Assembly (NCBI GenBank): GCA_002269645.1
Contig: NIVC01000162.1
Span: forward strand, 372,001-436,000
From: Macrostomum lignano
Taxonomy: Eukaryota
Length of the DNA stretch: 64,000 bases
Direction of reading: 5' to 3'
Part shown: positions 9,401-42,700 of the stretch, piece after piece
How the letters are laid out: each line of letters starts with the position of its first letter
Position numbering within the stretch: the stretch's first letter is position 1
Translations under genes and position numbers: made by a program
The notes under the pieces: generated by a model
Databases searched by the model: none
What the model saw: only the letters and a program-made list of their open reading frames with translations
What the model was told of the DNA's origin: nothing

Positions 9401-12400
9401 CACAAATCAAAAATGGCACTCAAATAATACTCACAAATCTAAATGGCACACAAACGTTACTCACAAATCAAAATGGCACTGAAAAAATGGTCATAAATCA
9501 AAAATGGCACACAAATAATGTTCACAAATCAAAAATGACACACAAATAATGCTCACAAATCAAAAATGGCACACAAAAAATGTTCACAAATCAAAAATGA
9601 CACACAAATAATGTTCACAAATCAAAAATGGCACACAAAAAATGTTCACAAATCAAAAATGACACACAAATAATGTTCAAAAAACAAAAATGGCACACAA
9701 ATAATGTTCACAAATCAAAATGGCACACAAATAATAGTCACAAATTAAAAAATGGCAGACAAATAATAGTCAGTTTGTTCAAAATGGCACACACAACTGG
9801 CAGAAATTCGAACTTAAATACCAATCGAAGAATTCGCAAAACAATCGAAGAATTCACAAACATATAAATTTTCGTCGCTCACCTTCCTCGTCGCCGAACG
9901 GTTCGCCTTCGCTCTCGCCGTCGGCGTCAGCGGCCGAGAGGCTGGACAGGGCCAGCTCTAGAGCGGCGGCGCTGCTCAGTACGACGGATTTTTTACGAGC
10001 GCTAACGCTGCCAGCTCGGAAGCGCATGGCAATTGCGGCGGCGTCGGCGGCAGTGGCAGAGGCGCCGGAGCCCAGGCGTGTGCGGCCGCGTCGCCGGCCT
10101 TCGACGGCGGCCTTGGCCTTGGCCAGCTCGTCGTCTGCGTTTTGCGGCGTGGGGAAGATAAAATAGTTGAAAGATTTTGTTCAAAACTTGCTTAAAAAAC
10201 TCCATGCATATCCTAAGTAGTCTACTTTCGATGCCAGTGAGTAGCATCTAAAGCTTTTAATACGGAGGATTAAAGTTAATGTTTTTAGCAAACGATACTG
10301 CAGTTAAAATTGAATGCCATTAAAAGCAGACAGGCAGCACGTAGCAGCACTCACCGCCCTGTCCTTTATCCAAAAAAGTCATGTTGGTGACGCAGCTGGT
10401 GTCAACAAAGTCTGCCAGTTTTCCGAGCGTGACCCTGAGCAGTTGGTACAGGGTATTGAATGCACTGATCTGTATAATTGTTTAATAAATCAAAAAGTCT
10501 AATTGCGTAGAAAATAGATTATACGATTTGGGATGAGATGAGATTTTATGTCTGGGATATCTGAAAAGAGCTTTTTATACCTAGAAGGAGATTTTGATAT
10601 CAAGAATGAGATTTTGATATCTAAGATGAAATTTTTATATCTAGCATGAGATTTTGACACAAAGAAAGAGATTTTGATATCTAGTATGAGATTTTGGTAT
10701 CTAGGATGAGATTTTGATATTTAGAATCAGAGTTAGAATCAGAGATTTTGATATCTAGGATGAGATTTTGATGTCTAGGATGAGATTTTGATTTTTAGAA
10801 TGATATCTCTAGAGCGTTATGGACAAACATACAAACAAACAAATATTAGAGATTAAGTATATTTAGATTTTGACATCTAGAATGAGATTTTGATATCTAG
10901 TATGAGATTTTTATGTGTAGCCTGAGATTTTGACATAAAGTAAGATATTTTGATATCTAGAATGAGATTTCTAATTCTTATTTTGACAATAAAAAATACC
11001 TGGTGCCATTGATGTAGCCGCTCTGCAGCTTCTTAATAGTGCTGTACAGCGAAGGTGCCTGCTCGCTGGAGTCCGCATTGAAGTACCAGTGGTACACGGG
11101 TATGATGAACAGCGGCCGGCCAACAGCCGACCAGGTGCGCCGCAGGAAGGCCACATCAGTGCGCAGCATGTCTAACAGAAAGTCCAAGTCCAGGCTCAGG
11201 TAGAACGAATGATGATCGAGGAACTGCGGAGTGAAGGCCACGGTGCGCTGGCCAACGATGTACAGCTTGCTGGTCGCCAGGATGCCAACCTCGCTGGACT
11301 GGCGGCCGCTGAGGCCCAGCTGGTGGCACTTGCCCAGGTGCCGATAGAAATGACTCAACACCTTGGCCGGGAACACCCGGATCTTGGTTTCCTTGTACAT
11401 CTCGGCAAAGTCTTGCACCTGCTTCAGTCCGAATCGGGTCTCCAAGGTGCCACGGATTTTGGCGTCTTCGGCAACCACCACAACCTGAAATTGGATCGCT
11501 TCATCAATCAGATTTCTACCTTTCTGACGCGGGGGAGTGGGTTATCGAGAGAGGTGGCAAGAAATTACAGATTCTAGGGAAGAGATTACAGATCCCAGGG
11601 GAAGAGATTACAGATTCCAGGGGAAGAGAGATTACAGATTCTATGGAAGAGATTACAGATTCTAGGGAAGAGAGATTGCAGACCCTAGGGAAGAGAGATT
11701 ACAGACTCTAGGGAAGAGAGATTACAGATCCCAGGGGAAGAGATTACCGATCCTAGGGGAAGAGATTACCGATCCTAGGGAAGAGAGATTACAGATTCTA
11801 TGGAAGAGAGATTACAGATTCTAGGGAAGAGATCACAGATCCTAGGGAAGAGAGATTACAGATCCTAGGAAAGAGAGATTACAGATCCTAAGGAAAAGAG
11901 ATTACAGATCCTAGGGAAGAGAAGTTACAGACCCTAGGGAAGAGAGATCACAGATCCTAGGGAAGAGATTACAGATCCCAGGGGAAGAGATTACCGATCC
12001 TAGGGAAGAGAGATGACAGATTCTAGGGAAGAGAGATTATAGATTCTAGGGAAGAGAGATTACAGACCCTAGGGAAGAGATTATAGATTCTAGGGAAGAG
12101 ATCACAGATCCTAGGGAAGAGAGATTACAGATCCTAGGGAAGAGATTACAGATCCCAGGGGAAGAGATTACAGATCCCAGGGAAGAGATTACAGATCCCA
12201 GGGGAAGAGATTACCGATCCTAGGGAAGAGAGATTACAGATTCTAGGGAAGAGAGATTACAGATCCTAGGAAAGAGAGATTACAGATCCTAAGGAAAAGA
12301 GATTACAGATCCTAGGGAAGAGAAGTTACAGACTCTAGGGAAGAGAGATTACAGATCCCAGGGGAAGAGATTACCGATCCTAGGGGAAGAGATTACCGAT

Positions 12401-15400
12401 CCTAGGGAAGAGAGATTACAGATTCTAGGGAAGAGAGATTATAGATTCTAGGGAAGAGATCACAGATCCTAGGGAAGAGAGATTACAGATCCTAGGAAAG
12501 AGAGATTACAGATCCTAAGGAAAAGAGATTACAGATCCTAGGGAAGAGAAGTTACAGACCCTAGGGAAGAGAGATCACAGATCCTAGGGAAGAGATTACA
12601 GATCCCAGGGGAAGAGATTACCGATCCTAGGGAAGAGAGATTACAGATTCTAGGGAAGAGAGATTATAGATTCTAGGGAAGAGATCACAGATCCTAGGGA
12701 AGAGAGATTACAGATCCTAGGAAAGAGAGATTACAGATCCTAAGGAAAAGAGAATACAGATCCTAGGGAAGAGAAGTTACAGACCCTAGGGAAGAGAGAT
12801 CACAGATCCTAGGGAAGAGATTACAGATCCCAGGGGAAGAGATTACCGATCCTAGGGAAGAGAGATGACAGATTCTAGGGAAGAAAGATTATAGATTCTA
12901 GGGAAGAGATCACAGATCCTATGGAAGAGAGATTACAGATCCTAGGAAAGAGAGATTACAGATCCTAAGGAAAAGAGATTACAGATCCTAGGGAAGAGAA
13001 GTTACAGACCCTAGGGAAGAGAGATCACAGATCCTAGGGAAGAGATTACAGATCCCAGGGGAAGAGATTACCGATCCTAGGGAAGAGAGATTACAGATTC
13101 TAGGGAAGAGAGATTATAGATTCTAGGGAAGAGAGATTACAGACCCTAGGGAAGAGAGATTACAGACTAGCGAAGAGAGATTACAGACCCTAGGGAAGAG
13201 AGATTACAGATCCTAGGGAAGAGATTACAGATCCCAGGGGAAGAGATTACAGATCCCAGGGGAAGAGATTACCGATCCTAGGGAAGAGAGATTACAGATT
13301 CTAGGGAAGAGAGATTATAGATTCTAGAGAAGAGAGATTACAGATCCTAGGAAAGAGAGATTACAGACCCTAGGGAAGAGAGATTACAGATCCTAGGAAA
13401 GAGAGATTACAGACCCTAGGGAAGAGAGATTACAGACTAGGGAAGAGAGATTACAGATCCTAGGAGAGAGAGATTACAGATTACAGACCCTACAGGCAAG
13501 AGAGATTACAGACCCTAGGGAAGAGAGATTACAGACCCTATAGGGAAGAGAGATTACAGACCCTAGGGAAGAGATTACAGATACAGAGGGCATACGTCAT
13601 GGATAGGATGGGGGAACATTGAAAAGAGAGCAGCTGAGCAGCAACCCACCTGCACCACCAAGTCGGGCTTAGCCTCTAGTCCCAGGCGCCTCCCGATTGG
13701 GTCAATCTCTTGCGGCCGCAGGAATTTGTCGCGCAACAGCTGGCAGATGACGTACAACGATTGAGTCCACAGGTGCGGCAGCGCACCAACCGGGTGGCGA
13801 TCCTGGCTACCCGGAGCGGCCCGCTCTGCTGCAACCAGGTGCCCTGGAACGCTGTAGGACTCGGGCATCTGCGGCAGTCCGTCAGAGTTCAGCAGAGCCA
13901 GCCGGTCCAGCAGGCGGGCGAAGCGGTCCGCCCGCTCGTCAGAGTCGGCGAACTGCGCGTCCAGCAGCTGGTAGCAGAGGAACAGGGGCCACTCGCACTC
14001 GATGTTCTCGAACTGGCGCAGCTCCCAGGGCTCGTAATAGAGCCGGTTAGGGTCCTCAACAGCTGTGCGGTAGCCGTCGCGCAGGAAGCGCCGGTAGCCG
14101 TACCTGGGGTGGGATTTCCGATGGATGATTATTAAGGGATTAGCGAGGCTGAGACTCGGAAAGGAAGGTTAAAAGCAATTTTAAAACTAACTAGGATAGA
14201 ATTTTATTTAATCGGATGGGAAATGGTTGGGATAAAGAACAGGATGGATGGAATGGGGAACAGGATGAGGAAAAGGATGGATGGGATGGGGAACAGGATA
14301 AGGAACAGGATGGATGGGATGGGGAACAGGATGGATGGGATGGGGAACAGGATGGATGTGATGGGGAACAGGATGGATGGGATGGGGAACAGGATGGGAT
14401 GGGGAACAGGATGGATTGGATGGGGAACAGGATGGATGGGATGGGGAACAGGATGGATGGGATGGGGAACAGGATGGATGGGATGGGGAACAGGATGGAT
14501 TGGATGGGGAACAGGATGGGATGGGGAACAGGATGGGATGGGGAACAGGATGGGTGGGATGGTGAGCAGGATGGGATGGGGAACAGGATGGATGTGATGG
14601 GGAACAGGATGGATGGGATGGGGAACAGGATGGGATGGGGAACAGGATGGATTGGATGGGGAACAGGATGGATGGGATGGGGAACAGGATGGGATGGGGA
14701 GCAGGATGGGATGGGGAGCAGGATGGGATGGGGAACAGGATGGGATGGGGAACAGGATGGGATGGGGAACAGGATGGGATGGGGAACAGGATGGGTGGGA
14801 TGGGGAGCAGGATGGGATGGGGAACAGGATGGGATGGGGAACAGGATGGGATGGGGAACAGGATGGGTGGGATGGGTAGCAGGATGGGATGGGGAACAGG
14901 ATGGATGTGATGGGGAACAGGATGGATGGGATGGGGAACAGGATGGGATGGGGAGCAGGATGGGATGGGAACAGGATGGGATGGGGAACAGGATGGGATG
15001 GGGAACAGGATGGGTGGGATGGGGAACAGGATGGATTGGATGGGGAACAGGATGGGATGGGGAACAGGATGGGTGGGATGGGGAGCAGGATGGGATGGGG
15101 AACAGGATGGATGTGATGGGGAACAGGATGGATGGGATGGGGAACAGGATGGGATGGGGAACAGGATGGGATGGGGAACAGGATGGGTGGGATGGGGAGC
15201 AGGATGGGATGGGGAACAGGATGGATGTGATGGGGAACAGGATGGATGGGATGGGGAACAGGATGGGATGGGGAACAGGATGGATTGGATGGGGAACAGG
15301 ATGGATGGGATGGGGAACAGGATGGATGGGATGGGGAACAGGATGGATGGGATGGGGAACAGGATGGATTGGATGGGGAACAGGATGGGATGGGGAACAG

Positions 15401-18146
15401 GATGGGATGGGGAACAGGATGGGTGGGATGGGGAGCAGGATGGGATGGGGAACAGGATGGATGTGATGGGGAACAGGATGGATGGGATGGGGAACAGGAT
15501 GGGATGGGGAACAGGATGGATTGGATGGGGAACAGGATGGATGGGATGGGGAACAGGATGGGATGGGGAGCAGGATGGGATGGGGAGCAGGATGGGATGG
15601 GGAACAGGATGGGATGGGGAACAGGATGGGATGGGGAACAGGATGGGTGGGATGGGGAGCAGGATGGGATGGGGAACAGGATGGGATGGGGAACAGGATG
15701 GGATGGGGAACAGGATGGGTGGGATGGGGAGCAGGATGGGATGGGGAACAGGATGGATGTGATGGGGAACAGGATGGATGGGATGGGGAACAGGATGGGA
15801 TGGGGAGCAGGATGGGATGGGGAACAGGATGGGATGGGGAACAGGATGGGATGGGGAACAGGATGGGTGGGATGGGGAACAGGATGGATTGGATGGGGAA
15901 CAGGATGGGATGGGGAACAGGATGGGTGGGATGGGGAGCAGGATGGGATGGGGAACAGGATGGATGTGATGGGGAACAGGATGGATGGGATGGGGAACAG
16001 GATGGGATGGGGAACAGGATGGATTGGATGGGGAACAGGATGGATGGGATGGGGAACAGGATGGATGGGATGGGGAACAGGATGGATTGGATGGGGAACA
16101 GGATGGATGGGATGGGGAGCAGGATGGGATGGGGAGCAGGATGGGATGGGGAACAGGATGGGATGGGGAACAGGATGGGTGTGATGGGGAGCAGGATGGG
16201 ATGGGGAACAGGATGGGATGGGGAACAGGATGGGTGGGATGGGGAGCAGGATGGGATGGGGAACAGGATGGATGTGATGGGGAACAGGATGGATGGGATG
16301 GGGAACAGGATGGGATGGGGAACAGGATGGGATGGGGAACAGGATGGGATGGGGAACAGGATGGGATGGGGAACAGGATGGATTGGATGGGGAACAGGAT
16401 GGATGGGATGGGAGCAGGATGGGATGGGGAACAGGATGGGATGGGGAACAGGATGGGTGGGATGGGGAGCAGGATGGATGGGATGGGGAACAGGATGGAT
16501 GTGATGGGGAACAGGATGGATGGGATGGGGAACAGGATGGATGGGGTGGGGAGCAGGATGGGATGGGGAACAGGATGGATGGGGTGGGGAGCAGGATGGG
16601 ATGGGGAACAGGATGGATGGGGAACAGGATGGGGAACAGGGTACACTGATAGGACACACTATACGAGTGAGATAGGGTGAGGAATGGGATGGAGAGTAGC
16701 AGTACAGTAAAAGTACGATTCCCCTAACACTGAACAAAAACAAGATCCTAGCGCTAATTAGTCAGGCGCTTGATGCTCTCACCTGCCCTGTAGCATGCTG
16801 TCAATGCAATTCCTAGTGCTGGCAACCAGCTCTTCCCTATCCACAGCGAATGCCGGATAGCCAATAACAGCCAGCAGGCCAGCGTCAGTCTCCTTAGAGC
16901 AGCTCTCCCTCGGCAGCATGGTGTCCAGCACGGCCGCGCAGTTCTGCGAGTCGTCAGCCATCACGTGGATAAACGATCGACAGCCGCCCGAGCTGCCGTA
17001 CAGGTCGAGCTCGGACAGCGCCTCCAGAGCCGCCTTGGTCATGCCTATAGAGGTGGAGTTGAGCTCCGGCTGGCCATTGTTAGTCTTGTCGCCTCGTTCC
17101 CACACGCCGTAGTCGCAGGTCATATAGGCCGCGTCAAGGTAGAACACAAGATTCTGTACGAATGCGGTCTCTTCGGCTGTGTAAACAAGCACCAAGCCTG
17201 AGGCGGTCATCTGTGCCAGGGCTAGTACGTACAGGGCGACAGCGTCAAACTGCAGGTGGCCATAGTTGGAATCGCCAGTGACTGGCGACAGGCTGCTGGC
17301 TGAGAACTTGCAGTGCAGCGCGTCCAGTGGCTGCCTGGTGTGCTTGAACCGCTCCACCTGCGCAGTGGGTTTGTGCTGGGCATCGTTAATAACAAAGCCC
17401 AAAGGCATTTGCGGTAAAATGGAAAAAAATCTGTTAGATTAGAAGTTTAGGTCTCGTGAAGTTTAGGTCTCGTGAAGTTTAGGTCTTGTCAAGTTTAGGT
17501 CTTTTCAAGTTTAGGTCTTTTCAAGTTTAGGTCTTTTCAAGTTTAGGTCTTTTTAAGTTTAGGTCTTTTTAAGTTTAGGTCTTTTCAAGTTTAGGTCTTT
17601 TCAAGTTTAGGTCTTTTTAAGTTTAGGTCTTGTGAAGTTTAGGTCTCGTGAAGTTTAGGTCTTGTGAAAGCGCCCCCTCCCCGAATCCATCTGGACGCGC
17701 GAGGAATCGAACCCGGGACCGTTTGGGCGAGAGACACACTTCACCAAAGCATCAAGGTAAGACAGCCGCTAACGGGAGCGCTTGAAATTTACAAAGAAGC
17801 CAGCAATAATTAATAGATATTTAGTGTCTGTGAGTTCTAATTTAAACACATTCATCACCTTATCAGCCTGACGCATCATACAGGCCAGCAGGCTCCGCAT
17901 GCACTTGATAGTCCGACCTTCGAGGTCTCGCAGCCTAGCCCTGTCCTGGTCCTCTTCGGCCACCTTTTTGAAGGCCAAAGCCAGCGCCCAGGTGCACATG
18001 GCAGCGTAGGTGTTGTCCCGGATGTAGGCATGATCGCTGCTGGGCGTAGATGGTATCAATCCCGTGATGTCATTCTGCCTGGCCAGCACAGTCTTCAGCA
18101 CCAGGCTGTGGTAATAGTCCAAATTCTTTCTGGGCTCTGGCGACGA
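457..18146 (-). CDS. PHKA: Phosphorylase b kinase regulatory subunit alpha, multi-exon, partial at both ends
   Basis: Hand-spliced exons (minus): 18146-17859, 17357-16783, 14103-13650, 11484-11000, 10434-10355, 10134-9883, 8715-8671 (tentative), 3670-3548, 2988-2781, 2339-2138, 1815-1560, 1020-922, 482-457 (tentative). All introns are GT-AG and phases agree. Alpha-type motifs: [67 protein letters not shown]. Start exon not identified; the gene continues beyond position 1. Confidence 0.95.
1153..1551. repeat. Irregular 13-15 bp minisatellite (ctgtagctgccc...) in PHKA intron
   Basis: Tandem copies of gtagctgccctct / gtagctgccccct are directly visible between exons 1560 and 1020. Confidence 0.9.
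1869..2025. repeat. 29-bp tandem repeat, about 5.5 copies, containing a Pol III B-box-like motif on the minus strand
   Basis: ttcgaa recurs at 1871, 1900, 1929, 1958, 1987 and 2016. The minus strand reads ggtcaggggttcgaat. Confidence 0.85.
3021..3139. repeat. 32-bp tandem repeat, about 3.7 copies
   Basis: ctgactcactgctcaccattgactgcagctgc starts at 3021, 3053, 3085 and 3117. Confidence 0.85.
3175..3378. repeat. 21-bp tandem repeat, about 9-10 copies
   Basis: Unit tagtgtacttccaatctgatc. Confidence 0.9.
3902..8128. repeat. 33-bp minisatellite, about 128 copies (4.2 kb), PHKA intron
   Basis: Unit agtgaagagttgatagatcagacaggtgtgtgt with recurring variants (agt/ggt, 2-bp deletion gagtttag, caggtg/cacgtg). 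Confidence 0.97.
8915..9790. repeat. 30-31 bp A-rich minisatellite, degenerating rightwards
   Basis: Unit caaatcaaaatggcactcaaatattactca. Confidence 0.9.
10590..10972. repeat. About 20-bp degenerate tandem repeat
   Basis: Unit gagattttgatatctaggat with substitutions. Confidence 0.8.
11560..13578. repeat. 21-24 bp purine-rich minisatellite with an approximately 225-bp higher-order repeat
   Basis: Unit gggaagagagattacagatccta. The variant cctaagg recurs at about 11887, 12288, 12514, 12739 and 12964. Confidence 0.93.
14232..16640. repeat. G-rich 17-21 bp minisatellite (ggatgggatggggaaca), 2.4 kb
   Basis: Directly visible. It accounts for the 800+ aa low-complexity ORFs in all three minus frames. 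Confidence 0.95.
17443..17668. repeat. 16-bp tandem repeat
   Basis: Unit aagtttaggtcttttc, about 14 copies. Confidence 0.9.
17696..17750 (-). mobile_element. tRNA-derived SINE head fragment
   Basis: The minus strand has GGTCCCGGGTTCGATTCC (B box and T arm) about 30 nt after a degenerate A-box-like TGGTGAAGTG. No full cloverleaf. Confidence 0.4.
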
Positions 18147-23431: not shown

Positions 23432-25132
23432 ACATCTGACACAGTCTGCTTGTCTCTGACACAGGGCGCCTGCCTACATCTGACACAGTCTGCTTGTCTC
23501 TGACACAGGGCGCCTGCCTGCATCTGACACAGTCTGCTTGTCTCTGACACAGGGCGCCTGCCTGCATCTGACACAGTCTGCTTGTCTCTGACACAGGGCG
23601 CCTGCCTGCATCTGACACAGTCTGCTTGTCTCTGACACAGGGCGCCTGCCTGCATCTGACACAGTCTGCTTGTCTCTGACACAGGGCGCCTGCCTGCATC
23701 TGACACAGTCTGCTTGTCTCTGACACAGGGCGCCTGCCTGCATCTGACACAGTCTGCTTGTCTCTGACACAGGGCGCCTGCCTGCATCTGACACAGTCTG
23801 CTTGTCTCTGACACAGGGCGCCTGCCTGCATCTGACACAGTCTGCTTGTCTCTGACACAGGGCGCCTGCCTGCATCTGACACAGTCTGCTTGTCTCTGAC
23901 ACAGGGCGCCTGCCTGCATCTGACACAGTCTGCTTGTCTCTGACACAGGGCGCCTGCCTGCATCTGACACAGTCTGCTTGTCTCTGACACAGGGCGCCTG
24001 CCTGCATCTGACACAGTCTGCTTGTCTCTGACACAGGGCGCCTGCCTACATCTGACACAGTCTGCTTGTCTATGACACAGGGCGCCTGCCTGCATCTGAC
24101 ACAGTCTGCTTGTCTCTGACACAGGGCGCCTGCCTGCATCTGACACAGTCTGCTTGTCTCTGACACAGGGCGCCTGCCTGCATCTGACACAGTCTGCTTG
24201 TCTCTGACACAGGGCGCCTGCCTGCATCTGACACAGTCTGCTTGTCTCTGACACAGGGCGCCTGCCTGCATCTGACACAGTCTGCTTGTCTCTGACACAG
24301 GGCGCCTGCCTACATCTGACACAGTCTGCTTGTCTATGACACAGGGCGCCTGCCTGCATCTGACACAGTCTGCTTGTCTCTGACACAGGGCGCCTGCCTG
24401 CATCTGACACAGTCTGCTTGTCTCTGACACAGGGCGCCTGCCTGCATCTGACACAGTCTGCTTGTCTCTGACACAGGGCGCCTGCCTGCATCTGACACAG
24501 TCTGCTTGTCTCTGACACAGGGCGCCTGCCTGCATCTGACACAGTCTGCTTGTCTCTGACACAGGGCGCCTGCCTGCATCTGACACAGTCTGCTTGTCTC
24601 TGACACAGGGCGCCTGCCTGCATCTGACACAGTCTGCTTGTCTCTGACACAGGGCGCCTGCCTGCATCTGACACAGTCTGCTTGTCTCTGACACAGGGCG
24701 CCTGCCTGCATCTGACACAGTCTGCTTGTCTCTGACACAGGGCGCCTGCCTGCATCTGACACAGTCTGCTTGTCTCTGACACAGGGCGCCTGCCTGCATC
24801 TGACACAGTCTGCTTGTCTCTGACACAGGGCGCCTGCCTGCATCTGACACAGTCTGCTTGTCTCTGACACAGGGCGCCTGCCTGCATCTGACACAGTCTG
24901 CTTGTCTCTGACACAGGGCGCCTGCCTGCATCTGACACAGTCTGCTTGTCTCTGACACAGGGCGCCTGCCTGCATCTGACACAGTCTGCTTGTCTCTGAC
25001 ACAGGGCGCCTGCCTGCATCTGACACAGTCTGCTTGTCTCTGACACAGGGCGCCTGCCTGCATCTGACACAGTCTGCTTGTCTCTGACACAGGGCGCCTG
25101 CATACATCTGACAGTCTATTTGTCTCTGACAC
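23432..25132. repeat. 44-bp highly homogeneous minisatellite, about 38 copies
   Basis: Unit catctgacacagtctgcttgtctctgacacagggcgcctgcctg, very few variants. Confidence 0.97.
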
Positions 25133-25441
25133 AAAAGCTATTCAATAAGGTGCACCGATAGCTTCCCACTCAATCAAAAACACTCTCAATCAATCAACAA
25201 CAACAATTTCTACATTTTTCCAACCAATCCATGCAGTATGTCTCTGGCCCACGATACTCAGAAAGTTTTTACAATATTAAACTACGGCTTTTAGAACACA
25301 AAGCAAGTGTGACGACCCCACCACCCAGCCTGCTGCAACCCAACTCTTATGCACTACTTGATTTGAGAGTTGGTTGGCTGTGCATGAACCGTGAACGTGG
25401 AAGATTGAAAACGGAATGAGGCCGGTTTTCCAGCGAATCCC

Positions 25442-30440: not shown

Positions 30441-31598
30441 CCTGTGTGGTCCTGAACCCACATTCCATTCATACCAAATCACTTTATGCTTCATTTCGAA
30501 GCTGTCGATACAATACAGCTACCAGTTCACAGAAATTCAAGCGATAGCTACTACTGCACACTTTGACAGTAGTAAATTATGGAAATTTTGCAACAGTATG
30601 CGTAGTAAAAGAACAACCGGATTGAATTCGGAATTCCCACCGCACCGGACACAAATCAGTTTCGACCAATTGGGCTGCCAGCTACACCTGCTGACATTCA
30701 AGTCGTGACGACAGGTGTAGATTGATTAATAGCTTGCTTTTAGAAGCAGCAAGCCGGAGATCTGTGGTGCAGAACTGGGTCGTTTATCATCTCGGAAGGT
30801 TCCGGTTAGTCAAAACCATGAACTACCAGCTGCATACCTGATACCTGATTAGTAAACTTCTTGCGGACTCGTCTTCATGCATCCACTTATAGTTGTTGAC
30901 TGGAATTGATGGCCATGGCAATTAATAATAAGATGTGGCACATACAAACTGGATTGATGATGCACAGTTTTTTTCTCCTGTGGATTAAATGCTGGCACGG
31001 AGTTCTTATCGCCGCCGAGTACAACAGCAGTAGCTTTAAGTCGGTTGTCTTAGAAATGACCTGGAGGCCAGTAAGTAATTCGGATATTTGTTCTTTTGCT
31101 GTTGCATTTTGTATTCTTTCTAGAGAATACTGGTTATACTGGAGCATATATTAAAGGCACTAGCGACACGACAAATATCCAGCCTCCGGCATGTCGCTCT
31201 TCTGTCTTGTTGTCTGAATCTCTGTCTAAGTGTCTTAGTTTCTCAGTCTCTCAGTCTGTTAGTGTCCTAATTAGCGCCCTTCTTAGTGTCTTATTGTCTT
31301 AGTGCCTAGTGTCTTAGTGTCTTAGTGTCTTAGTGCCTATTGTCTCAGTATTCTAGTGTCTTAGTATCTGTCCTAATGTCTTAGTGTCTTAGCGTCATAG
31401 TGCCTTAGTGCCTTAGTGTTTTTGTTTCTTAGTGTCTTAGTGTCTTAGTATTCTAGTGTCTCAGTATCTGTCTTAGTGTCTTAGTGCCTTAATTCCTTAG
31501 TGTCTAATAAGTGCCTTGTCTTAGCGTCTTGTGTCCTAGTGCCTTAGTGTCTTAGTGTCTTGGAAAATGAATCCGAAAATCAACATAATGTAAGTAAA

Positions 31599-31630
31599 GA
31601 CGCGTTTCGCACTCCTAGGTGCATCTTCAG
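31599..31630 (-). ncRNA. Minimal type I hammerhead ribozyme (Penelope-type), left arm
   Basis: The minus strand reads CUGAAGA-U-GCAC-CUAGGA-GUGC-GAAA-CGC-GUC, with palindromic ACGCGU in place of stem III. Confidence 0.75.
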
Positions 31631-31813
31631 GTTTATTTTTTCAACAACGAAATTAAACAGGTTTTGCGAATAAATATGTGGAGTTGGTTGTAGGTAAACA
31701 AGAAAAATTAGAAAAATTATTGAACAAATCGATATTGGAGAACACATGAGTTAGTCCGTACGGCAGAGTGAAGTCCGGGGGCGGAAAGAATGTACACCCA
31801 GTACTCTCTCTCA

Positions 31814-32140
31814 TCAAAAGACACGTAGTAGGTGACCCGCGCCACTATGTTGGAGTTGTGTGTTTAGGCTGGGTGACTGGGCTTTTATGTGCATGGCCTC
31901 AAGAATTCTAAGTTTGAAGTCCGACTGACATTGGTCGATGATTTTAAAGTGCTCGTTTGGGTTGCAGTTAGAGCAGCTACTACAGTGCAGTAAGTGATCT
32001 TGTATAGCAGACGGTTTGAGCCAGTGCTCCCTGGTTCTGGTGTGTAGGTGTCTTTTAGTTTTCCCCACGTAGGAGACGCTCTGGTCAACAGAGCAGTTGA
32101 ATTGATAGACGACACCAGCACGCAGAGCACGGGGGACACA
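31814..32140 (-). CDS. Penelope-like element GIY-YIG endonuclease domain, 5'-truncated (no RT)
   Basis: VPRALRAGVVYQFNC...SYVGKTKRHLHTRTREH...LEAMHI...PSLN. The stop codon lies inside the pseudo-LTR. An in-frame ATG at 32497 reads through the 12-bp repeat into this domain. Confidence 0.85.
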   Translation of the reverse strand, partial: CVPRALRAGVVYQFNCSVDQSVSYVGKTKRHLHTRTREHWLKPSAIQDHLLHCSSCSNCNPNEHFKIIDQCQSDFKLRILEAMHIKAQSPSLNTQLQHSGAGHLLRVF

Positions 32141-32480
32141 CGGCCGGCGGCTGGGCCGGCGGCTGGGCCGGCGGCTGGGCCGGCAGCAGGGCCGGCAGCA
32201 GGGCCGGCAGTAGGGCCGGCAGCAGGACCGGCAGCAGGACCGGCAGCAGGACCGGCAGCAGGACCGGCAGCAGGGCCGGCAGCAGGACCGGCAGCAGGAC
32301 CGGCGGCAGGGCCGGCAGCAGGGCCGGCAGCAGGGCCGGCGGCAGGGCCGGCGGCAGGGCGAGTGGCATGGCGAGCGGCAGTGCGAGCGGCAGGGCGAGC
32401 GGCAGGGCGAGTGGCAGGTCGAGCGGCAGGGCGAGCAGCAAGGCGAGTGGCAGGGCGAGCGGCAGGGCCAGTGGCAGTGC
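32131..32480. repeat. GC-rich 12-bp repeat (cctgctgccggc / cctgccgctcgc on minus)
   Basis: Directly visible. It encodes PAAG/PAAR, or Cys/Arg-rich runs, depending on frame. Confidence 0.85.
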
Positions 32481-32576
32481 GAGCAGCTGTCTCGCATGGA
32501 ATTAAAACTTTGGACTGTCTATCAGACGCCGTCCGCTTAGGGCTAAAACTGGTGCCGCCGCGACCCGCCTCTTTGC

Positions 32577-33472
32577 TCAGTTTTTTGATTCGGCAGCCAC
32601 CGAGCTGTGTTGCAGCTTTGAGTGGCTCCCTTCGCAGATGCGGCAGATGTGGGCGAAATTGCAGGTGTGTCTGTGACAGCCTTTGTTGCTATTGAACAGG
32701 CCGCAGATGACCTGTCCAGCGGATGACAGCTGGCCCCTGCTACGGTGACCCTGGACTCCTTGACCGACCGCGACTGGGCCAGCAGCTCGCAGGTTTTTGG
32801 GCGCCGTCATATGCTTGATGATGAGGTTCAGATCGGGGCTGTCCCAGTCGCGCTGTCGCGAGTGCTGCTGCAGCCTCATGTCCTGGTCGTACTGGAGCAC
32901 CACCTTCCAGTCGTAGCCAGCGTCGATCAGCTCGCCGATGTGGATGTTAAAGTTGAGGTAGGCGTTCAGACTTTTGCAGTCGGGCTGTCCATCCGTACCG
33001 GGCGCCACCAGCTGGCCGGTCTCCAGCAGTCGCTGCATGATCCGCGCGTTGGCAGCCACCCACTGGCCGAAGTTGACTCCGGACAGGCTCGGCGTTGCGC
33101 CTTTCAGAGTCAGGCGACCACGATCCTGTGTCAGCCATCCTCCCAACTGCTGCCTCTCGTCCAGAAATTCCGGGATGAGCAGCGCTGATGGGGGCCGCTG
33201 GGCTCCGGCCGAATCAAACCTCGGTTGTCGGCTCTGGTCCCCGAACAGGCTGGCGTAGATGTCCGGCCCTCCTCTGGCCAGCGGGGGCGATGCGGCGCCA
33301 CTGCGGATCGACTGCACTTCATCCCGCAACTGGGCCTCAGCCTTCTGCAGTTTAAGCAGCTCGATCCTCTTCTGAGTCTGCCGAATCTGCGCTTCTGTGG
33401 CCTCCTCCGCTGGCGCAGCCCGGCGCACGTCATCCTCGTCCTGGTCGTCGTCACCGTCGTCATCGCTGGAGA
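32577..33472 (-). CDS. DIRS/Ngaro-type gag-like ORF1 fragment, truncated at the 5' end by the pseudo-LTR
   Basis: Motifs FGQWVAANARIM, YDWKVVLQYDQDMR and a C-terminal CGLFNSNKGCHRHTCNFAHICRICEGSH zinc finger. The frame is open up to the arm junction (VSSDDDGDDDQDEDD) with no native ATG. Confidence 0.7.
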
Positions 33473-33681
33473 CGGGTCACCTACTACGTGTCTTTTGATG
33501 AGAGAGAGTACTGGGTGTACATTCTTTCCGCCCCCGGACTTCACTCTGCCGTACGGACTAACTCATGTGTTCTCCAATATCGATTTGTTCAATAATTTTT
33601 CTAATTTTTCTTGTTTACCTACAACCAACTCCACATATTTATTCGCAAAACCTGTTTAATTTCGTTGTTGAAAAAATAAAC

Positions 33682-33713
33682 CTGAAGATGCACCTAGGAG
33701 TGCGAAACGCGTC
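33682..33713 (+). ncRNA. Minimal type I hammerhead ribozyme (Penelope-type), right arm
   Basis: ctgaaga t gcac ctagga gtgc gaaa cgc gtc; predicted cleavage after C33713. Stem I pairing is short and imperfect. Confidence 0.75.
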
Positions 33714-34454
33714 TTTACTTACATTATGTTGATTTTCGGATTCATTTTCCTTTTACTAGCCAAGCGAGCTACACTACCCGATTTCTACTTAGTGTCTTGC
33801 GTCCTAGTGACTTAGAGCCTTAGTATCTTACTGCCTTTAGTAGTGTTTTAGTGTCTTAGTGCCTTAGGGTCCTAGTGTCTAGTATCTGTCTTAGTGTCCT
33901 AGTGTCTTAGTTCCTTAGTGTCTTAGTGCCTTAGAGCCTTAGTGTCTTAGTTATATCTTAGGGCCTGTCTGTCTGTGTTAAGTGTCCGTATTAGTGTCTT
34001 TTAGACATCTGTCTGTCGACAGTCCGTCACAATGATTCAGCAAAAATCATTTGAGAGTAGAAGGCATTACCGTTAAACATAAGCGTTTAAAACAAATTAA
34101 AAGAAAAAACCTGTGTTATTAGTATGGCCAGAGCAGGCAAATGAGGTCTAGCAGTGCTTTATATACGGTTAAATAAAGTAATTGCTTAATCCGCAATTTC
34201 ACTGCACATTGATGACGTTTGCCAGAATGGCTAGCTCTAAGCAGCTTTGGATCAGAAGGCTAACTTTTTTCGAATACTAAAAACCATTCAATAGAGTGCA
34301 ATAAATAATAACAAAACCTTTAAATTTGTACATCAACAGTACAGCGAAGCATAATGTATAATAATGTATTAATTCCTCACTTTCGCCCGGCCATATGACT
34401 ATAGAAATCCTATTTTAGTCCAGCGCAATAAAACCAAATAAATGCGTTTCTGCA

Positions 34455-35215
34455 GTCTATGGCCGGGCCTAATAAGGGAATAAATACGATTCTGTAGTTT
34501 ATGGCTGAACCCAATTCGGGAATAAATACGTTTTTTGTAGTCTATGGTCGGGGCCAATAGGGGAATAAATACGAATCTGTTGTCTATGGCCTGGCCCAAC
34601 ATGGGAATAAATAAGGTTCTGTTGTCTATGGCCGGGCCAAATTGGAGAATAAATAAGATTCTGTTGTCTATGGCCGGGCCAAATTGGAGAATAAATAAGA
34701 TTCTGTTGTCTATGGCCGGGCCAAATTGGAGAATAAATAAGATTCTGTTGTCTATGGCCGGGCCAAATTGGAGAATAAATAAGATTCTGTTGTCTATGGC
34801 CGGGCCAAATTGGAGAATAAATAAGAATCTGTTGTCTATGGCCGGGCCAAATTGGAGAATAAATAAGAATCTGTTGTCTATGGCCGGGCCAAATTGGGGA
34901 ATAAATACGATTCTGTTGTCTATGGCCGGGCCGAATTGGAGAATAAATAAGATTCTGTTGTCTATGGCCGGGCCAAATTGGAGAATAAATAAGATTCTGT
35001 TGTCTATGGCCGGGCCAAATTGGAGAATAAATAAGAATCTGTTGTCTATGGCCGGGCTAAATTGGTGAATAAATACGTTTTTTTGTAGTATATGGCCGGG
35101 CCCAATAGGGGAATAAATACGATTTTATTGTCTATGGCCGGGCCGAATTGGACATCTCCCCAAATTTATTCCCCAATTTGGGGAATAAATACGTTTTTTG
35201 TAGTCTATGGTGGGG
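34455..35215. repeat. 42-bp minisatellite with degenerate edges
   Basis: Unit tctatggccgggccaaattggagaataaataagattctgttg. Confidence 0.9.
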
Positions 35216-39700: not shown

Positions 39701-42700
39701 ATTTTCTATAGAGTAAATGCACTACTTGGCAAAACCAAACTATAAAACTTTGCTGAGCTCTTCTAATAGTTGGAAAACTCCCATCTTTGAAAAGACTATG
39801 GAGACTGCAATCCTCAGTTCACTGAGCCTGCAATCCTGAGTTCACTGGGCCTGCAATTCTCAGTTCATTGCATAAGGCTGTAGTCCTCAGTTCACTGAGT
39901 TAGAAGCAGTTAACCCTAGGTAGAACACAATCCCAGGTAGAACCACAACCCCAAGTAGAACCAAAACCCCAGGTAGAACAACCCCAAATAGAACCACAAG
40001 CCCAGGTAGAACCACAAGCCCAGGTAGAACCACAAGCCCAGGTAGAACAACAACCCTAGGTAGAACCACAACCCCAGGTAGAACCACAAGCCCAGGTAGA
40101 ACCACAAGCCCAGGTAGAACAACAACCCTAGGTAGAACCACAACCCCAGGTAGAACCACAACCCCAGGTAGAACCACAACCCCAGGTAGAACCGCAACCC
40201 CAGGTAGAACCGCAACCCCAGGTAGAACCGCAACCCCAGGTAGAACCGCAACCCCAGGTAGAACCGCAACCCCAGGTAGAACCGCAACCCCAGGTAGAAC
40301 CGCAACCCCAGGTAGAACCACAACCCCAAGTAGAACCGCAACCCCAGGTAGAACCGCAACCCCAGGTAGAACCACAACCCCAGGTAGAACCACAACCCCA
40401 GGTAGAACCACAACCCCAGGTAGAACCACAACCCCAGGTAGAACCACAACCCCAGGTAGAACCACAACCCCAGGTAGAACCACAACCCCAGGTAGAACCG
40501 CAACCCCAGGTAGAACAACAACCCTAGGTAGAACAACAACCCTAGGTAGAACCACAACCCCAGGTAGAACCACAACCCTAGGTAGAACAACAACCCCAGG
40601 TAGAACCACAACCCCAGGTAGAACCGCAACCCACAACCCTCCGTCAATGACCTGAGCTCACCAGTGTTTAAAAAATCCTCTTCAAAGGTGCAGTTCCACC
40701 TGTGGTGCTGGAACATGACCTGGCAGGCCCGGTAGCCATTCACCAGGCCGCTGTGCGCCAGTCGGTCAGCCACGCTGCCGGCGCGGCAGAGGTTGCGCAG
40801 ACGCGGCGTCAGGTCAGCGGCGGTGCACAGCTCGTCGGGCACATGCTTGAGCAGCTGGTAGAATGAGGTCGAGTCCATGGGCGGCTGCTGCCTTCTGAAC
40901 TGCGACCGTCTGTGGAACAATGAGAGAACCAGCTGTTACCCCTCTGACTGTTTCCCAGACAGCTGCTGTCCCCTCCGTGACTGTTTCCCAGACAGCTGCT
41001 GTCCCCTCTGTGACTGTTTCCCAGACAGCTGCTGTCCCCTCCGTGACTGTTTCCCAGACAGCTGCTCAGCTGCTGTCCCCTCCATGACTGTTTCCCAGAC
41101 AGCTGCTGTCCCCTCTGTGACTGTTTCCCAGACAGCTGCTGTCCCCCTGTGACTGTTTCCCAGACAGCTGCTGTCCCCTCTGTGACTGTTTCCCAGACAG
41201 CTGCTGTCCCCTCCGTGACTGTTTCCCAGACAGCTGCTGTCCCCTCCGTGACTGTTTCCCAGACAGCTGCTGTCCCCTCTGTGACTGTTTCCCAGACAGC
41301 TGCTGTCCCCCTGTGACTGTTTCCCAGACAGCTGCTGTCCCCCTGTGACTGTTTCCCAGACAGCTGCTGTCCCCTCTGTGACTGTTTCCCAGACAGCTGC
41401 TGTCCCCTCTGTGACTGTTTCCCAGACAGCTGCTGTCCCCTCTGTGACTGTTTCCCAGACAGCTGCTGTCCCCTCTGTGACTGTTTCCCAGACAGCTGCT
41501 GTCCCCCTGTGACTGTTTCCCAGACAGCTGCTGTCCCCTCTGACTGTTTCCCAGACAGCTGCTGTCCCCTCTGTGACTGTTTCCCAGACAGCTGCTGTCC
41601 CCTCTGTGACTGTTTCCCAGACAGCTGCTGTCCCCTCTGACTGTTTCCCAGACAGCTGCTGTCCCCTCTGTGACTGTTTCCCAGACAGCTGCTGTCCCCT
41701 CTGACTGTTTCTCAGACAGCTGCTGTCCCCTCTGTGACTGTTTCCCAGACAGCTGCTGTCCCCTCTGTGACTGTTTCCCAGACAGCTGCTGTCCCCTCTG
41801 ACTGTTTCTCAGACAGCTGCTGTCCCCTCTGTGACTGTTTCCCAGACAGCTGCTGTCCCCCTGTGACTGTTTCCCAGACAGCTGCTGTCCCCCTGTGACT
41901 GTTTCCCAGACAGCTGCTGTCCCCCTGTGACTGTTTCCCAGACAGCTGCTGTCCCCCTGTGACTGTTTCCCAGACAGCTGCTGTCCCCCTGTGACTGTTT
42001 CCCAGACAGCTGCTGTCCCCTCTGTGACTGTTTCCCAGACAGCTGCTGTCCCCTCTGTGACTGTTTCCCAGACAGCTGCTGTCCCCTCTGTGACTGTTTC
42101 CCAGACAGCTGCTATCCCCTCTGTGACTGTTTCCCAGACAGCTGCTGTCCCCTCCGTGACTGTTTCCTAGACAGCTGCTGTCCCCTCTGTGACTGTTTCC
42201 CAGACAGCTGCTGTCCCCCTGTGACTGTTTCCCAGACAGCTGCTGTCCCCCTGTGACTGTTTCCCAGACAGCTGCTGTCCCCTCTGTGACTGTTTCCCAG
42301 ACAGCTGCTGTCCCCTCCGTGACTGTTTCCCAATAATATATAATAATAATATTATATTATATTATTAATGAATATTTTCGAACGCCTGTTGCCATCAAGT
42401 GAAATAAATTTGCACGTGGTTTCCCGCGCTCTCAACAGGATTCGCACGCTGTGGCCCCAATTTAATTATTGATTATTACGCAATCCAATAAACCTTGCCG
42501 CTTTCTGAATTCCCTTTCCGAGTTGAAGCATTTTTCGCACCTTGTAAACGTGCAGTTTCAAAGGCGAGGTTGTCAAACAGAGCTTGTTCGGTTGGTGCTA
42601 ATAGCAAGCTAATCAGACTGACTCGAATGGCACCCGTGACTGCAACTTGCAGTGCGTGTAACATTTGTTTATGCATACTCATGCTGCCTGCAAGCCTCAC

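What the first reader, a model, noticed from the sequence alone, without database searches (positions are those of the whole stretch)
31562..33787. Young chimeric retroelement: inverted hammerhead-bearing Penelope arms enclosing DIRS gag plus GIY-YIG nuclease
Seen: two 278-bp arms, identical by eye, in inverted orientation. On the minus strand the interior is a 5'-truncated DIRS/Ngaro-type gag ORF, a Pro/Ala repeat, then an abrupt switch near 32140 to a Penelope GIY-YIG domain whose stop lies in the arm. There is no RT and no tyrosine recombinase. An 11-bp direct repeat flanks the unit inside an 8-bp repeat tract. Known: Penelope elements have pseudo-LTRs that can be inverted and carry hammerheads, while DIRS elements are a separate order. 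Inference: Penelope RT jumped templates onto a DIRS RNA, producing a non-autonomous hybrid that may be mobilised in trans, a retrozyme-like vehicle with protein cargo. A read-through transcript would fold into a 278-bp panhandle.
Basis: partly seen in the sequence, partly recalled or inferred. Interest (0 to 1): 0.85.

Follow-up and report, generated by a model that had tools for sequence, protein, structure and literature searches.

The report
Penelope insertion carrying a DIRS-type gag
A very recent insertion made by a Penelope-like retrotransposon copied only its own tail end and then continued onto the gag gene of an unrelated tyrosine-recombinase (DIRS/Ngaro-type) retroelement, leaving a real but probably dead, one-off hybrid.

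Summary
Two perfect 278-nt inverted arms (31562-31839, 33473-33750) enclose, on the minus strand, an intact but N-terminally truncated gag-like ORF, a 12-nt tandem array, and the C-terminal GIY-YIG endonuclease of a Penelope-like element (PLE), whose stop codon lies in the left arm.

Relatives of the gag sit directly upstream of DIRS/Ngaro-type RT, RNase H and tyrosine recombinase. The endonuclease is 50% identical to the C-terminus of a PLE RT-EN ORF. Rfam finds no hammerhead, but each arm carries a minimal PLE-type hammerhead motif. The same architecture, with covariation, lies downstream of the endonuclease in five other PLE loci.

The inverted truncated copy, the 37-bp tail on one end only and the satellite target are all published PLE insertion signatures. 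The Pro/Ala array reads in the -1 (pol) frame of the DIRS-type element and probably came with the gag, so there is one inter-element junction, near 32141.

Best reading: one PLE insertion event that made a chimeric cDNA. The "retrozyme-like vehicle mobilised in trans" idea is not supported:
- each transcript carries only one sense hammerhead;
- there is no tandem copy;
- the gag has no start codon.

Copy number could not be tested. Interest is moderate to low.

The parts
31281..31561 (.). Left flank: 8-bp satellite (TCTTAGTG)n, the insertion target. Its last 11 bp (31551-31561, CTTAGTGTCTT) recur at 33788-33798.
   Evidence: The satellite period makes a 3-bp and an 11-bp TSD indistinguishable.
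31562..31839 (-). Left arm: the 3'-terminal 278 nt of the PLE, continuous with the body. It holds the last 23 nt of the EN ORF, the stop codon and about 250 nt of 3' UTR. The outer end (31562) is the presumed RT start site.
   Evidence: 100% inverted repeat; EN ORF runs into it; PMC11167929 for the meaning of the outer end (inference).
31599..31630 (-). Minimal PLE-type hammerhead motif, CUGAAGA-U-GCAC-CUAGGA-GUGC-GAAA-CGCG-UC. It has an intact core, one extra nucleotide after A9, a G10.1-C11.1 pair, a 4-bp helix II and a palindromic ACGCGU helix III. Helix I is weak (UUUA/UAAA, offset by one).
   Evidence: criteria from PMC4209133. Rfam is negative.
31814..32140 (-). C-terminal GIY-YIG endonuclease domain of a canonical PLE (VVYQFNC...YVGKTKRHL...REH...LEAMHI...LN...LLRVF*). 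The stop codon is at 31814-31816.
   Evidence: Pfam PF01541, E=5e-4, below the cut-off. 50% identity over 106 aa to the end of the RT-EN ORF of L006. 38% identity to P0151.
32141..32142 (-). Inter-element junction. The last array unit breaks off after GCCGGCC, and PLE protein homology starts at 32137.
32142..32487 (-). 12-nt tandem array, about 29 units in three sub-types. It reads (PAAG)n/(AARP)n in the -1 (pol) frame of the DIRS-type element and was probably carried in with the gag.
   Evidence: Close relatives L001 and L003 also have short-unit arrays directly after gag.
32580..32586 (-). A AAA AAC heptamer abutting the gag stop codon: a putative -1 ribosomal frameshift site into the pol frame.
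   Evidence: CAAAAAACTGA is invariant at the gag end in the window, L001, L003, L014, L015, L016 and L017. In L014 and L015 the -1 frame leads into the RT.
32577..33472 (-). gag-like ORF1 of a tyrosine-recombinase retroelement, lacking about 45 N-terminal residues (SAP domain and start codon) but otherwise intact. It comprises a coiled coil, a conserved core (ANARIM...YDW...YD.DMR...W) and a C-terminal CCCH zinc finger plus CxxC..H.
   Evidence: Genomic context of relatives.
33473..33750 (+). Right arm: an inverted, 5'-truncated copy of the same PLE 3' end, joined head-to-head to the truncated gag. The hammerhead motif lies at 33682-33713 (+).
   Evidence: This architecture is described for PLEs in PMC8557442 and PMC3846280.
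33751..33787 (+). 37-bp one-sided extension ('tail') beyond the right arm. It is unique in the window.
   Evidence: PLE tails of 30-40 bp at one end: PMC8557442; equated with the stretch between two RT start sites in PMC11167929. That it is PLE sequence is inferred; no parent element was available.
33788..33950 (.). Right flank: continuation of the 8-bp satellite.

Best explanation
One recent insertion event by the machinery of a canonical (C-terminal endonuclease) Penelope-like element into an 8-bp satellite.

Proposed steps (the architecture is shown; the steps are inferred):
1. Reverse transcription started at the PLE RNA's internal start site.
2. It copied 578 nt of PLE 3' end (3' UTR with the minimal hammerhead, then the GIY-YIG coding part).
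3. At about 32141 it continued on RNA of a DIRS/Ngaro-type element, inside the low-complexity array at the start of that element's pol frame.
4. It ran through the frameshift site and gag and stopped at 33472, before the gag N-terminus.
5. A second, short cDNA (278 + 37 nt) of the same PLE 3' end, primed on the other target strand from the neighbouring start site, was joined head-to-head. This produced the inverted arms and the one-sided tail.

The product has no RT, no recombinase, no usable gag start codon and no downstream tandem copy. It is most likely a dead-on-arrival chimeric retrocopy, not a new mobile family.
For: PLE identity of the outer parts:
- The EN is 50% identical to the C-terminus of an RT(YVDD)-EN ORF in L006, including the shared ...LL(N/R)VF* end. 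It also matches L007, a partial-tandem PLE, and L009.
- A minimal hammerhead lies 184 nt downstream of the stop.
- The same architecture lies about 120-170 nt downstream of the EN match in L006, L008, L010 and L011, and 103 nt downstream in L009, where it falls inside the end of the ORF. These motifs show C3-G8 to U3-A8 covariation, compensatory helix II changes, a bulge after A9 and palindromic helix III.
- The motif occurs nowhere else in the window. Shuffles give 0.05 strict motifs per window.

DIRS-order identity of the cargo:
- L015 has gag, RT (YLDDFL), RNase H and YR in a row.
- L002 has gag followed by RVT_1.
- L014 has gag followed by the RT N-terminus.
- P0010 combines SAP, gag and YR.
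- The A AAA AAC site is conserved, and its -1 frame leads to the RT.

Single event:
- The arms are identical.
- PLE sequence lies on both outer sides, DIRS sequence only inside, and the same satellite lies on both flanks.

Match to published PLE biology:
- Inverted 5'-truncated copy, 30-40-bp tail at one end and microsatellite bias (PMC8557442).
- Both target strands cleaved and extended, and two RT start sites that define the tail (PMC11167929).
- Foreign genes and simple repeats captured between pLTRs, attributed to template jumps (PMC3846280).
Against: - No parent PLE or DIRS-type element is in the window and the genome could not be searched. The template switch itself, the PLE origin of the 37-bp tail and the single-copy status are therefore unverified.
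- Helix I of the hammerhead is weak, and Rfam does not call the motif.
- The TSD cannot be scored inside the satellite.
- Identity of the arms could be maintained by gene conversion, so youth is likely but not proven.
Confidence: 0.7

Rival explanations
1. The chimera already existed as DNA. A 5'-truncated PLE copy had inserted into the internal tandem array of a DIRS-type element, which fits the PLE preference for simple repeats. A read-through transcript of that nested locus was then copied here by PLE RT. No template switch occurred.
For: The junction lies exactly at the edge of a tandem array. PLEs favour micro- and minisatellites (PMC8557442). Relatives of this gag carry arrays right after gag. 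The end product would be identical.
Against: In the Anolis PLE, RNA 3' of the RT start site is required (PMC11167929). A solo truncated copy would lack that RNA unless it sat in tandem. No such source locus is in the window.
Confidence: 0.2
2. The unit is one member of an actively propagating non-autonomous family: PLE ends carrying a DIRS gag cargo, mobilised in trans.
For: The arms are identical and the ORFs intact. PLE pLTRs can mobilise foreign cargo in trans in Adineta vaga (PMC3846280). Non-autonomous PLE derivatives are known (PMC8557442; bioRxiv 10.64898/2026.07.22.740005).
Against: There is no second copy in 64 kb. The arms are inverted rather than direct, so each transcript has only one sense hammerhead. 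There is no tandem copy 3' of the RT start site. The gag lacks its N-terminus and a start codon. The array is out of frame with the EN.
Confidence: 0.12
3. Assembly artefact: a mis-join or fold-back that creates a false inverted repeat or a false PLE/DIRS junction.
For: Perfect inverted repeats and repeat-rich surroundings are hard to assemble. PMC8557442 notes that PLE structures cause assembly problems.
Against: The architecture reproduces specific PLE hallmarks that an artefact would not invent: a tail on one end only, arms ending at the satellite on both sides, and 1.6 kb of unique interior. The junction at about 32141 sits at the end of an array, not inside it.
Confidence: 0.06
4. The gag-like ORF is the normal ORF1 of a PLE family, and the unit is simply an internally deleted PLE.
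For: Some PLE clades do have an ORF1 with a coiled coil (Fig. 1 legend of PMC8557442).
Against: Every relative with readable context is followed by a DIRS/LTR-class RT (YLDDFL), RNase H and/or a tyrosine recombinase. The conserved frameshift site leads into that RT. The full-length PLE in L007 has no such ORF. tblastn with PLE proteins matches only the EN part.
Confidence: 0.02

Closest known systems
Canonical EN+ Penelope-like element insertions (Penelope/Poseidon type) with an inverted 5'-truncated copy and a 'tail'
   Same: C-terminal GIY-YIG EN. Minimal hammerhead in the terminal repeat. Inverted truncated copy at the 5' side. A 30-40-bp extension at one end only. Insertion into a simple repeat (PMC8557442, PMC3846280, PMC4209133, PMC11167929).
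   Different: The body is not PLE beyond the last 578 nt. The RT and the rest of the ORF are replaced by sequence from another retroelement order.
Penelope-mediated capture or mobilisation of foreign sequence in Adineta vaga (NRPS and LRR genes, non-coding inserts, N-rich repeat inserts; PMC3846280)
   Same: Unrelated sequence framed by PLE terminal repeats, including an inverted one. A simple-repeat tract lies at the capture point. Template jumps were proposed there as the cause.
   Different: There the cargo lay between two direct pLTRs plus one inverted pLTR and shared no internal PLE sequence. Here the cargo is fused to the PLE EN coding region, only one direct 3' end and one inverted copy are present, and the cargo is a gag of a DIRS-order element.
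DIRS-order retroelements with gag-RT-RH-YR order (Ngaro-like), e.g. the element at L015 10001-13777
   Same: Homologous ORF1 (coiled coil, conserved core, CCCH finger, ...KN* end) and the A AAA AAC site at the gag stop.
   Different: No RT, RNase H or YR. No DIRS-type terminal repeats. The SAP domain and start codon are missing.
Animal non-LTR retrozymes (PMC7229834; bioRxiv 10.64898/2026.07.22.740005)
   Same: PLE-related hammerhead-bearing sequence without its own RT.
   Different: Retrozymes are small, non-coding and arranged as direct tandem copies, so two sense ribozymes can excise a circle. This unit is 2.2 kb, carries ORFs, and has its two motifs on opposite strands.
Chimeric retrocopies made by template switching of LINE reverse transcriptases (e.g. 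U6-L1 chimeras; from general knowledge, not checked here)
   Same: The 3' part comes from the retroelement and the 5' part from another RNA, inserted as one unit.
   Different: The enzyme class is different (PLE), as is the insertion signature (inverted arm and tail). The acceptor is another retrotransposon's RNA.

Membership tests
Penelope-like elements (canonical EN+) | PLE/TERT-related reverse transcriptase | tested here: not met
   tblastn with three PLE RT-EN ORFs matches only 31817-32137. The 1633-nt interior is fully accounted for by other parts. The unit is a PLE-derived fragment, not an autonomous PLE.
Penelope-like elements (canonical EN+) | C-terminal GIY-YIG endonuclease homologous to PLE endonucleases | tested here: met
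   50% identity over 106 aa to the end of the L006 RT-EN ORF, and 37-39% to L007 and L009. The Pfam GIY-YIG match is weak.
Penelope-like elements (canonical EN+) | Pseudo-LTR or inverted 5'-truncated copy framing the insert | tested here: met
   278-nt perfect inverted copy of the 3' end. No direct pLTR is present.
Penelope-like elements (canonical EN+) | 30-40-bp 'tail' at one end only | tested here: met
   A 37-bp unique extension at 33751-33787 beyond the right arm only. That it is PLE sequence could not be checked without a parent copy.
Penelope-like elements (canonical EN+) | Hammerhead motif in the terminal repeat | tested here: met
   The motif meets the min-HHR traits listed in PMC4209133 and is conserved in position and architecture in five other PLE loci. 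Rfam models do not detect it. Cleavage was not tested.
Penelope-like elements (canonical EN+) | Target-site duplication | tested here: inconclusive
   An 11-bp repeat is present but lies in an 8-bp periodic satellite. A 3-bp and an 11-bp duplication are equally compatible.
DIRS-order tyrosine-recombinase retroelements (DIRS/Ngaro) | Tyrosine recombinase | tested here: not met
   No match to the L015 YR anywhere in the window.
DIRS-order tyrosine-recombinase retroelements (DIRS/Ngaro) | DIRS/LTR-class RT and RNase H | tested here: not met
   No significant match to the L015 or L002 RT or RH in the window.
DIRS-order tyrosine-recombinase retroelements (DIRS/Ngaro) | ORF1 (gag-like) homologous to that of YR elements | tested here: met
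   489 relatives in the representative library. Context in L015, L002, L014 and P0010 shows RT, RH and YR downstream. The frameshift heptamer is shared.
DIRS-order tyrosine-recombinase retroelements (DIRS/Ngaro) | DIRS-type inverted terminal repeats with an internal complementary region, or split direct repeats | tested here: not met
   The only terminal repeats are the PLE-derived arms, which contain the EN stop and the hammerhead.
Retrozymes (non-LTR, animal) | Two or more hammerheads in direct orientation, so that one transcript can be cut to a unit and circularised | tested here: not met
   The two motifs are on opposite strands: 31599-31630 (-) and 33682-33713 (+).
Retrozymes (non-LTR, animal) | Small non-coding unit in tandem arrays | tested here: not met
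   The unit is 2.2 kb with two long ORFs and is single in the window.
Retrozymes (non-LTR, animal) | Circular RNA | not testable with these tools
   No RNA data are available.

The most novel reading that the evidence does not exclude
The hybrid is not a one-off. Copies with the same about-32141 and 33472/33473 junctions exist elsewhere in this genome. That would make it a non-autonomous element built from two retroelement orders, spread by PLE enzymes, and direct evidence that PLE reverse transcriptase recombines RNAs of unrelated retrotransposons into new mobile units.
Probability: 0.12. Interest if true: 0.6.

Novelty: new member of a known kind. Interest (0 to 1): 0.33.

Why it matters
The unit is a clean, unmutated example of how Penelope-like elements insert: cDNA from both target strands, two start sites 37 nt apart, and a preference for a satellite target. 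It also shows that their reverse transcriptase, or its template, can join RNA from a different retroelement order.

Such young chimeras help define PLE template-switch junctions and the minimal 3' sequence that is copied. I found no earlier report of a PLE/DIRS hybrid, though that rests on a single keyword search. As a single, probably inert copy it has little consequence for the host beyond a potential 278-bp double-stranded RNA hairpin if it is transcribed.

A side result is the description of a large gag family of tyrosine-recombinase retroelements. It has a SAP domain, a coiled coil and a CCCH finger, no Pfam model for its core, and a conserved A AAA AAC frameshift site.

Tried and rejected
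Searches that gave nothing useful:
- Rfam at gathering score and at E<=10 found no hammerhead.
- The MFE fold of the 3' region is no better than shuffles, as expected for a dimer-dependent minimal hammerhead.
- Pfam gave no hit on the gag.
- A PDB profile search matched only the CCCH finger. A PDB search with the EN found nothing.
- The word-indexed homologue search found 1 to 3 hits per query.
- The metagenome scan with the gag alignment found nothing (after one search failed for lack of conserved columns). The viral-contig scan found nothing.
- Exact-protein look-ups of both window ORFs and of P0010 found nothing.
- Pfam on the short RT-like fragment of L004 found nothing.
- The sigma-70 promoter and terminator scan is irrelevant for a eukaryote.
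- ARAGORN found no tRNA. The tail's faint resemblance to a tRNA 5' half was dropped.

Readings considered and rejected:
- Arms as DIRS inverted terminal repeats. They contain the PLE EN stop and the hammerhead.
- In-situ nested insertions. PLE sequence lies on both outer sides and the satellite is continuous outside them.
- A gag-PA-EN fusion protein. The three parts are in three different frames.
Full report
**Observation**

The two arms are real and exact: 31562-31839 and 33473-33750, 278 nt, 100% complementary, 1633 nt apart. The next base on either side no longer pairs. Nothing else in the 64-kb window resembles the unit.

Read on the minus strand, the interior holds three parts:
- An ORF open from the arm junction to a stop at 32577-32579.
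- A 12-nt tandem array of about 29 units at 32142-32487.
- A 108-codon GIY-YIG domain at 32140-31817, whose stop (31814-31816) is inside the left arm.

The unit sits in an 8-bp satellite. Beyond the right arm there are 37 unique bases (33751-33787) before the satellite resumes. The 11-bp flanking repeat exists. In an 8-bp periodic tract it cannot be told from a 3-bp duplication or from chance.

**The endonuclease and the arms are Penelope-like**

Pfam gives only a sub-threshold GIY-YIG hit. A scan of metagenome contigs found eight loci that encode relatives.
- In L006 the match is 50% identical over 106 residues. It forms the C-terminus of a 358-aa ORF with PLE-type RT motifs (LRYVDDIF, LKFT.E, PFLD, LPYIG) and the same ending (...LLNVF* against ...LLRVF*).
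- L007 is a partial tandem of an 825-aa RT-EN ORF, the classic pseudo-LTR arrangement.
- L009 is similar.

Back-searching these ORFs against the window matches only 31817-32137. PLE homology therefore begins exactly where the array ends. The conserved block that precedes the GIY motif in PLEs (LPYIG...VVF...K) is absent.

**The hammerhead motif**

Rfam does not report a hammerhead, at gathering score or at E<=10. Each arm nevertheless carries CUGAAGA-U-GCAC-CUAGGA-GUGC-GAAA-CGCG-UC in the sense orientation of the PLE.

The motif has every trait that Cervera and De la Pena list as emergent for minimal PLE hammerheads (PMC4209133):
- a G10.1-C11.1 pair;
- a palindromic helix III/loop 3, here ACGCGU, which suggests action as a dimer.

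A simple descriptor run on all fetched loci finds the same architecture on the coding strand just downstream of the EN match: about 120-170 nt in L006, L008, L010 and L011, and 103 nt in L009, where the motif falls inside the end of the ORF. In the window it starts 184 nt after the stop codon. These motifs share the one-nucleotide bulge and show:
- core covariation, CUGA.GA or UUGA.AA (the published U3-A8 variant);
- unrelated but pairing helix II sequences, with compensatory changes between L010 and L011;
- different palindromes (ACGU, AACGUU, AGCU, ACUAGU).

In the window the descriptor hits only the two arms. Block shuffles give 0.5 loose and 0.05 strict hits per window. Helix I in the window copy is weak (UUUA/UAAA, offset by one). 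Catalysis is untested. Metazoan PLE hammerheads are poor ribozymes in vitro in any case (PMC4209133, PMC11167929).

**The gag-like ORF belongs to tyrosine-recombinase retroelements**

It has no Pfam match, but an exhaustive HMMER search finds 489 relatives. The closest (42-59% identity in the alignment; P0001-P0004) align end to end. They show that the window copy lacks only the N-terminal about 45 residues, which in relatives are a SAP domain. All invariant Cys and His residues and the ...KN* end are retained. The C-terminus is a CCCH-type finger.

Context decides the family:
- In L015 (NCBI assembly GCA_002269645.1) the gag is followed at once by an RT (SPLGAIPK..., YLDDFL), an RNase H-like ORF and a tyrosine recombinase (HGLRRGGAT...W...Y).
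- In L002 it is followed by an RVT_1 RT.
- In L014 it is followed by the RT N-terminus.
- P0010 joins SAP, gag, RT N-terminus and recombinase in one model.

This is the gag-RT-RH-YR order of Ngaro-like members of the DIRS order. No PLE locus shows this ORF.

**The array probably came with the gag**

The gag ends in an invariant CAAAAAACTGA in all seven loci examined. In L014 and L015 the -1 frame from A AAA AAC runs straight into the RT. That makes a -1 frameshift site likely (inferred; not assayed).

In the window the same -1 frame reads KKLSKEAGRGG...CETAART and then (AARP)n/(PAAG)n through the whole array. Two close relatives also have short-unit arrays immediately after gag, open in that frame: 21-bp units in L001 and 18-bp Pro/Ala-rich units in L003.

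The Pro/Ala repeat is thus best read as a variable low-complexity start of the DIRS-type pol frame. This leaves one inter-element junction, at about 32141/32142, where the last unit breaks off after GCCGGCC. The array is in frame with neither gag (which stops before it) nor the EN (where it reads Cys/Arg/Pro/Ser).

**Mechanism**

The published PLE insertion signature matches this unit point by point:
- "a 30- to 40-bp extension (tail)" at one end;
- microsatellite insertion bias (PMC8557442; also PMC3846280).

In vitro, an Anolis PLE protein cleaves and extends both target strands. It starts reverse transcription at two adjacent internal sites, and the stretch between them is the tail (PMC11167929).

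I therefore infer one event:
1. A long cDNA started at the site that corresponds to 31562. It ran through 578 nt of PLE RNA, continued on DIRS-type RNA within the array, and ended in gag at 33472.
2. A short cDNA started 37 nt further out on the other strand (33787) and ended after 315 nt.
3. The two were joined head to head.

Capture of foreign genes and of simple-repeat tracts by PLEs, attributed to template jumps, is documented in Adineta vaga (PMC3846280).

I cannot separate a template switch from copying of a pre-existing chimeric transcript, in which a truncated PLE had inserted in the array of a DIRS-type element. The Anolis requirement for RNA 3' of the start site argues mildly for the switch. 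In-situ nesting is excluded, because PLE sequence is on both outer sides and the satellite is continuous outside them.

**What the unit can and cannot do**

It has no RT, no YR and no direct repeat. On either strand a transcript carries one sense hammerhead and one antisense copy, so retrozyme-like excision and circularisation is not expected. The sense 3' end stops at the start site without a tandem copy. The gag has lost its start codon, and its first in-frame ATG is about 145 codons in. I rate it as dead on arrival.

A read-through transcript would form a 278-bp perfect hairpin. That follows from the sequence and might feed RNA silencing; it was not tested.

Zero differences in 278 bp put the divergence between the arms below about 1.1% (95% bound, my calculation), unless conversion homogenises them.

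**Limits**

The genome is unknown and could not be searched. Copy number, parents, empty sites and read support are all open. A literature search for PLE/DIRS chimeras found nothing specific.

**Verdict**

The 'new mobile vehicle' reading is not supported. This is a new instance of a known kind of event, a PLE-made chimeric insertion, and it is of moderate-to-low interest unless further copies exist.

Noticed in passing
window 32580-32586 (-); L001 1213, L003 1240, L014 1145, L015 11110, L016 1275, L017 1220: An invariant CAAAAAACTGA lies at the end of the gag-like ORF in all seven loci. The A AAA AAC heptamer is a classic -1 slippery site, and in L014 and L015 the -1 frame runs directly into the RT. 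A gag-pol frameshift seems to be a family trait of these SAP/CCCH-gag tyrosine-recombinase elements.
   Followed up: partly
L001 1253-1323; L003 1402-1533; window 32142-32487: Close relatives of the gag are followed within 30-150 bp by short-unit tandem arrays (21-bp, 18-bp, 12-bp units) that stay open in the pol (-1) frame. This suggests a fast-evolving low-complexity segment at the start of pol in this lineage.
   Followed up: partly
window 33688-33732 (+) and its mirror in the left arm: An ATG overlaps A9 and the start of helix II of the hammerhead, the position where the Anolis PLE ORF starts (PMC11167929). Here the frame closes after 14 codons (MHLGVRNASLLTLC*), so the parent ORF start, or an intron, lies elsewhere.
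   Followed up: no
window 1-64000, e.g. 3906-8128, 11560-13582, 14214-16632, 23433-25133, 40945-42332: The window is packed with unrelated minisatellites (35 TRF rows at score >=200). They include a 33-bp unit repeated 129 times and a 44-bp unit repeated 39 times at 99% identity. Several produce long spurious ORFs.
   Followed up: no
window 56807-58081 (-): An uninterrupted 424-codon ORF that by eye looks like a Tc1-type transposase (HTH region, DDE-type motifs...GGATKY*); no search was run on it. It suggests an animal genome with recently active DNA transposons.
   Followed up: no
window 31082-31180: A 33-nt imperfect inverted repeat about 400 bp left of the unit gives a weak, far sub-threshold match to the mir-9461 model (23 bits against 84; E=0.09). 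It is probably chance.
   Followed up: no
window 34437-35152 versus arms 31663-31679 and 31734-31750: The 42-bp minisatellite to the right shares two 17-nt stretches of 76-82% identity with the arm. This is short and probably chance (families D8 and D9).
   Followed up: no
L015 1-182 and 14210-17157: The contig that carries the complete gag-RT-RH-YR element also has a second tyrosine-recombinase fragment at its start. It also carries several ORFs of unclear, possibly viral-like, origin next to the element.
   Followed up: no
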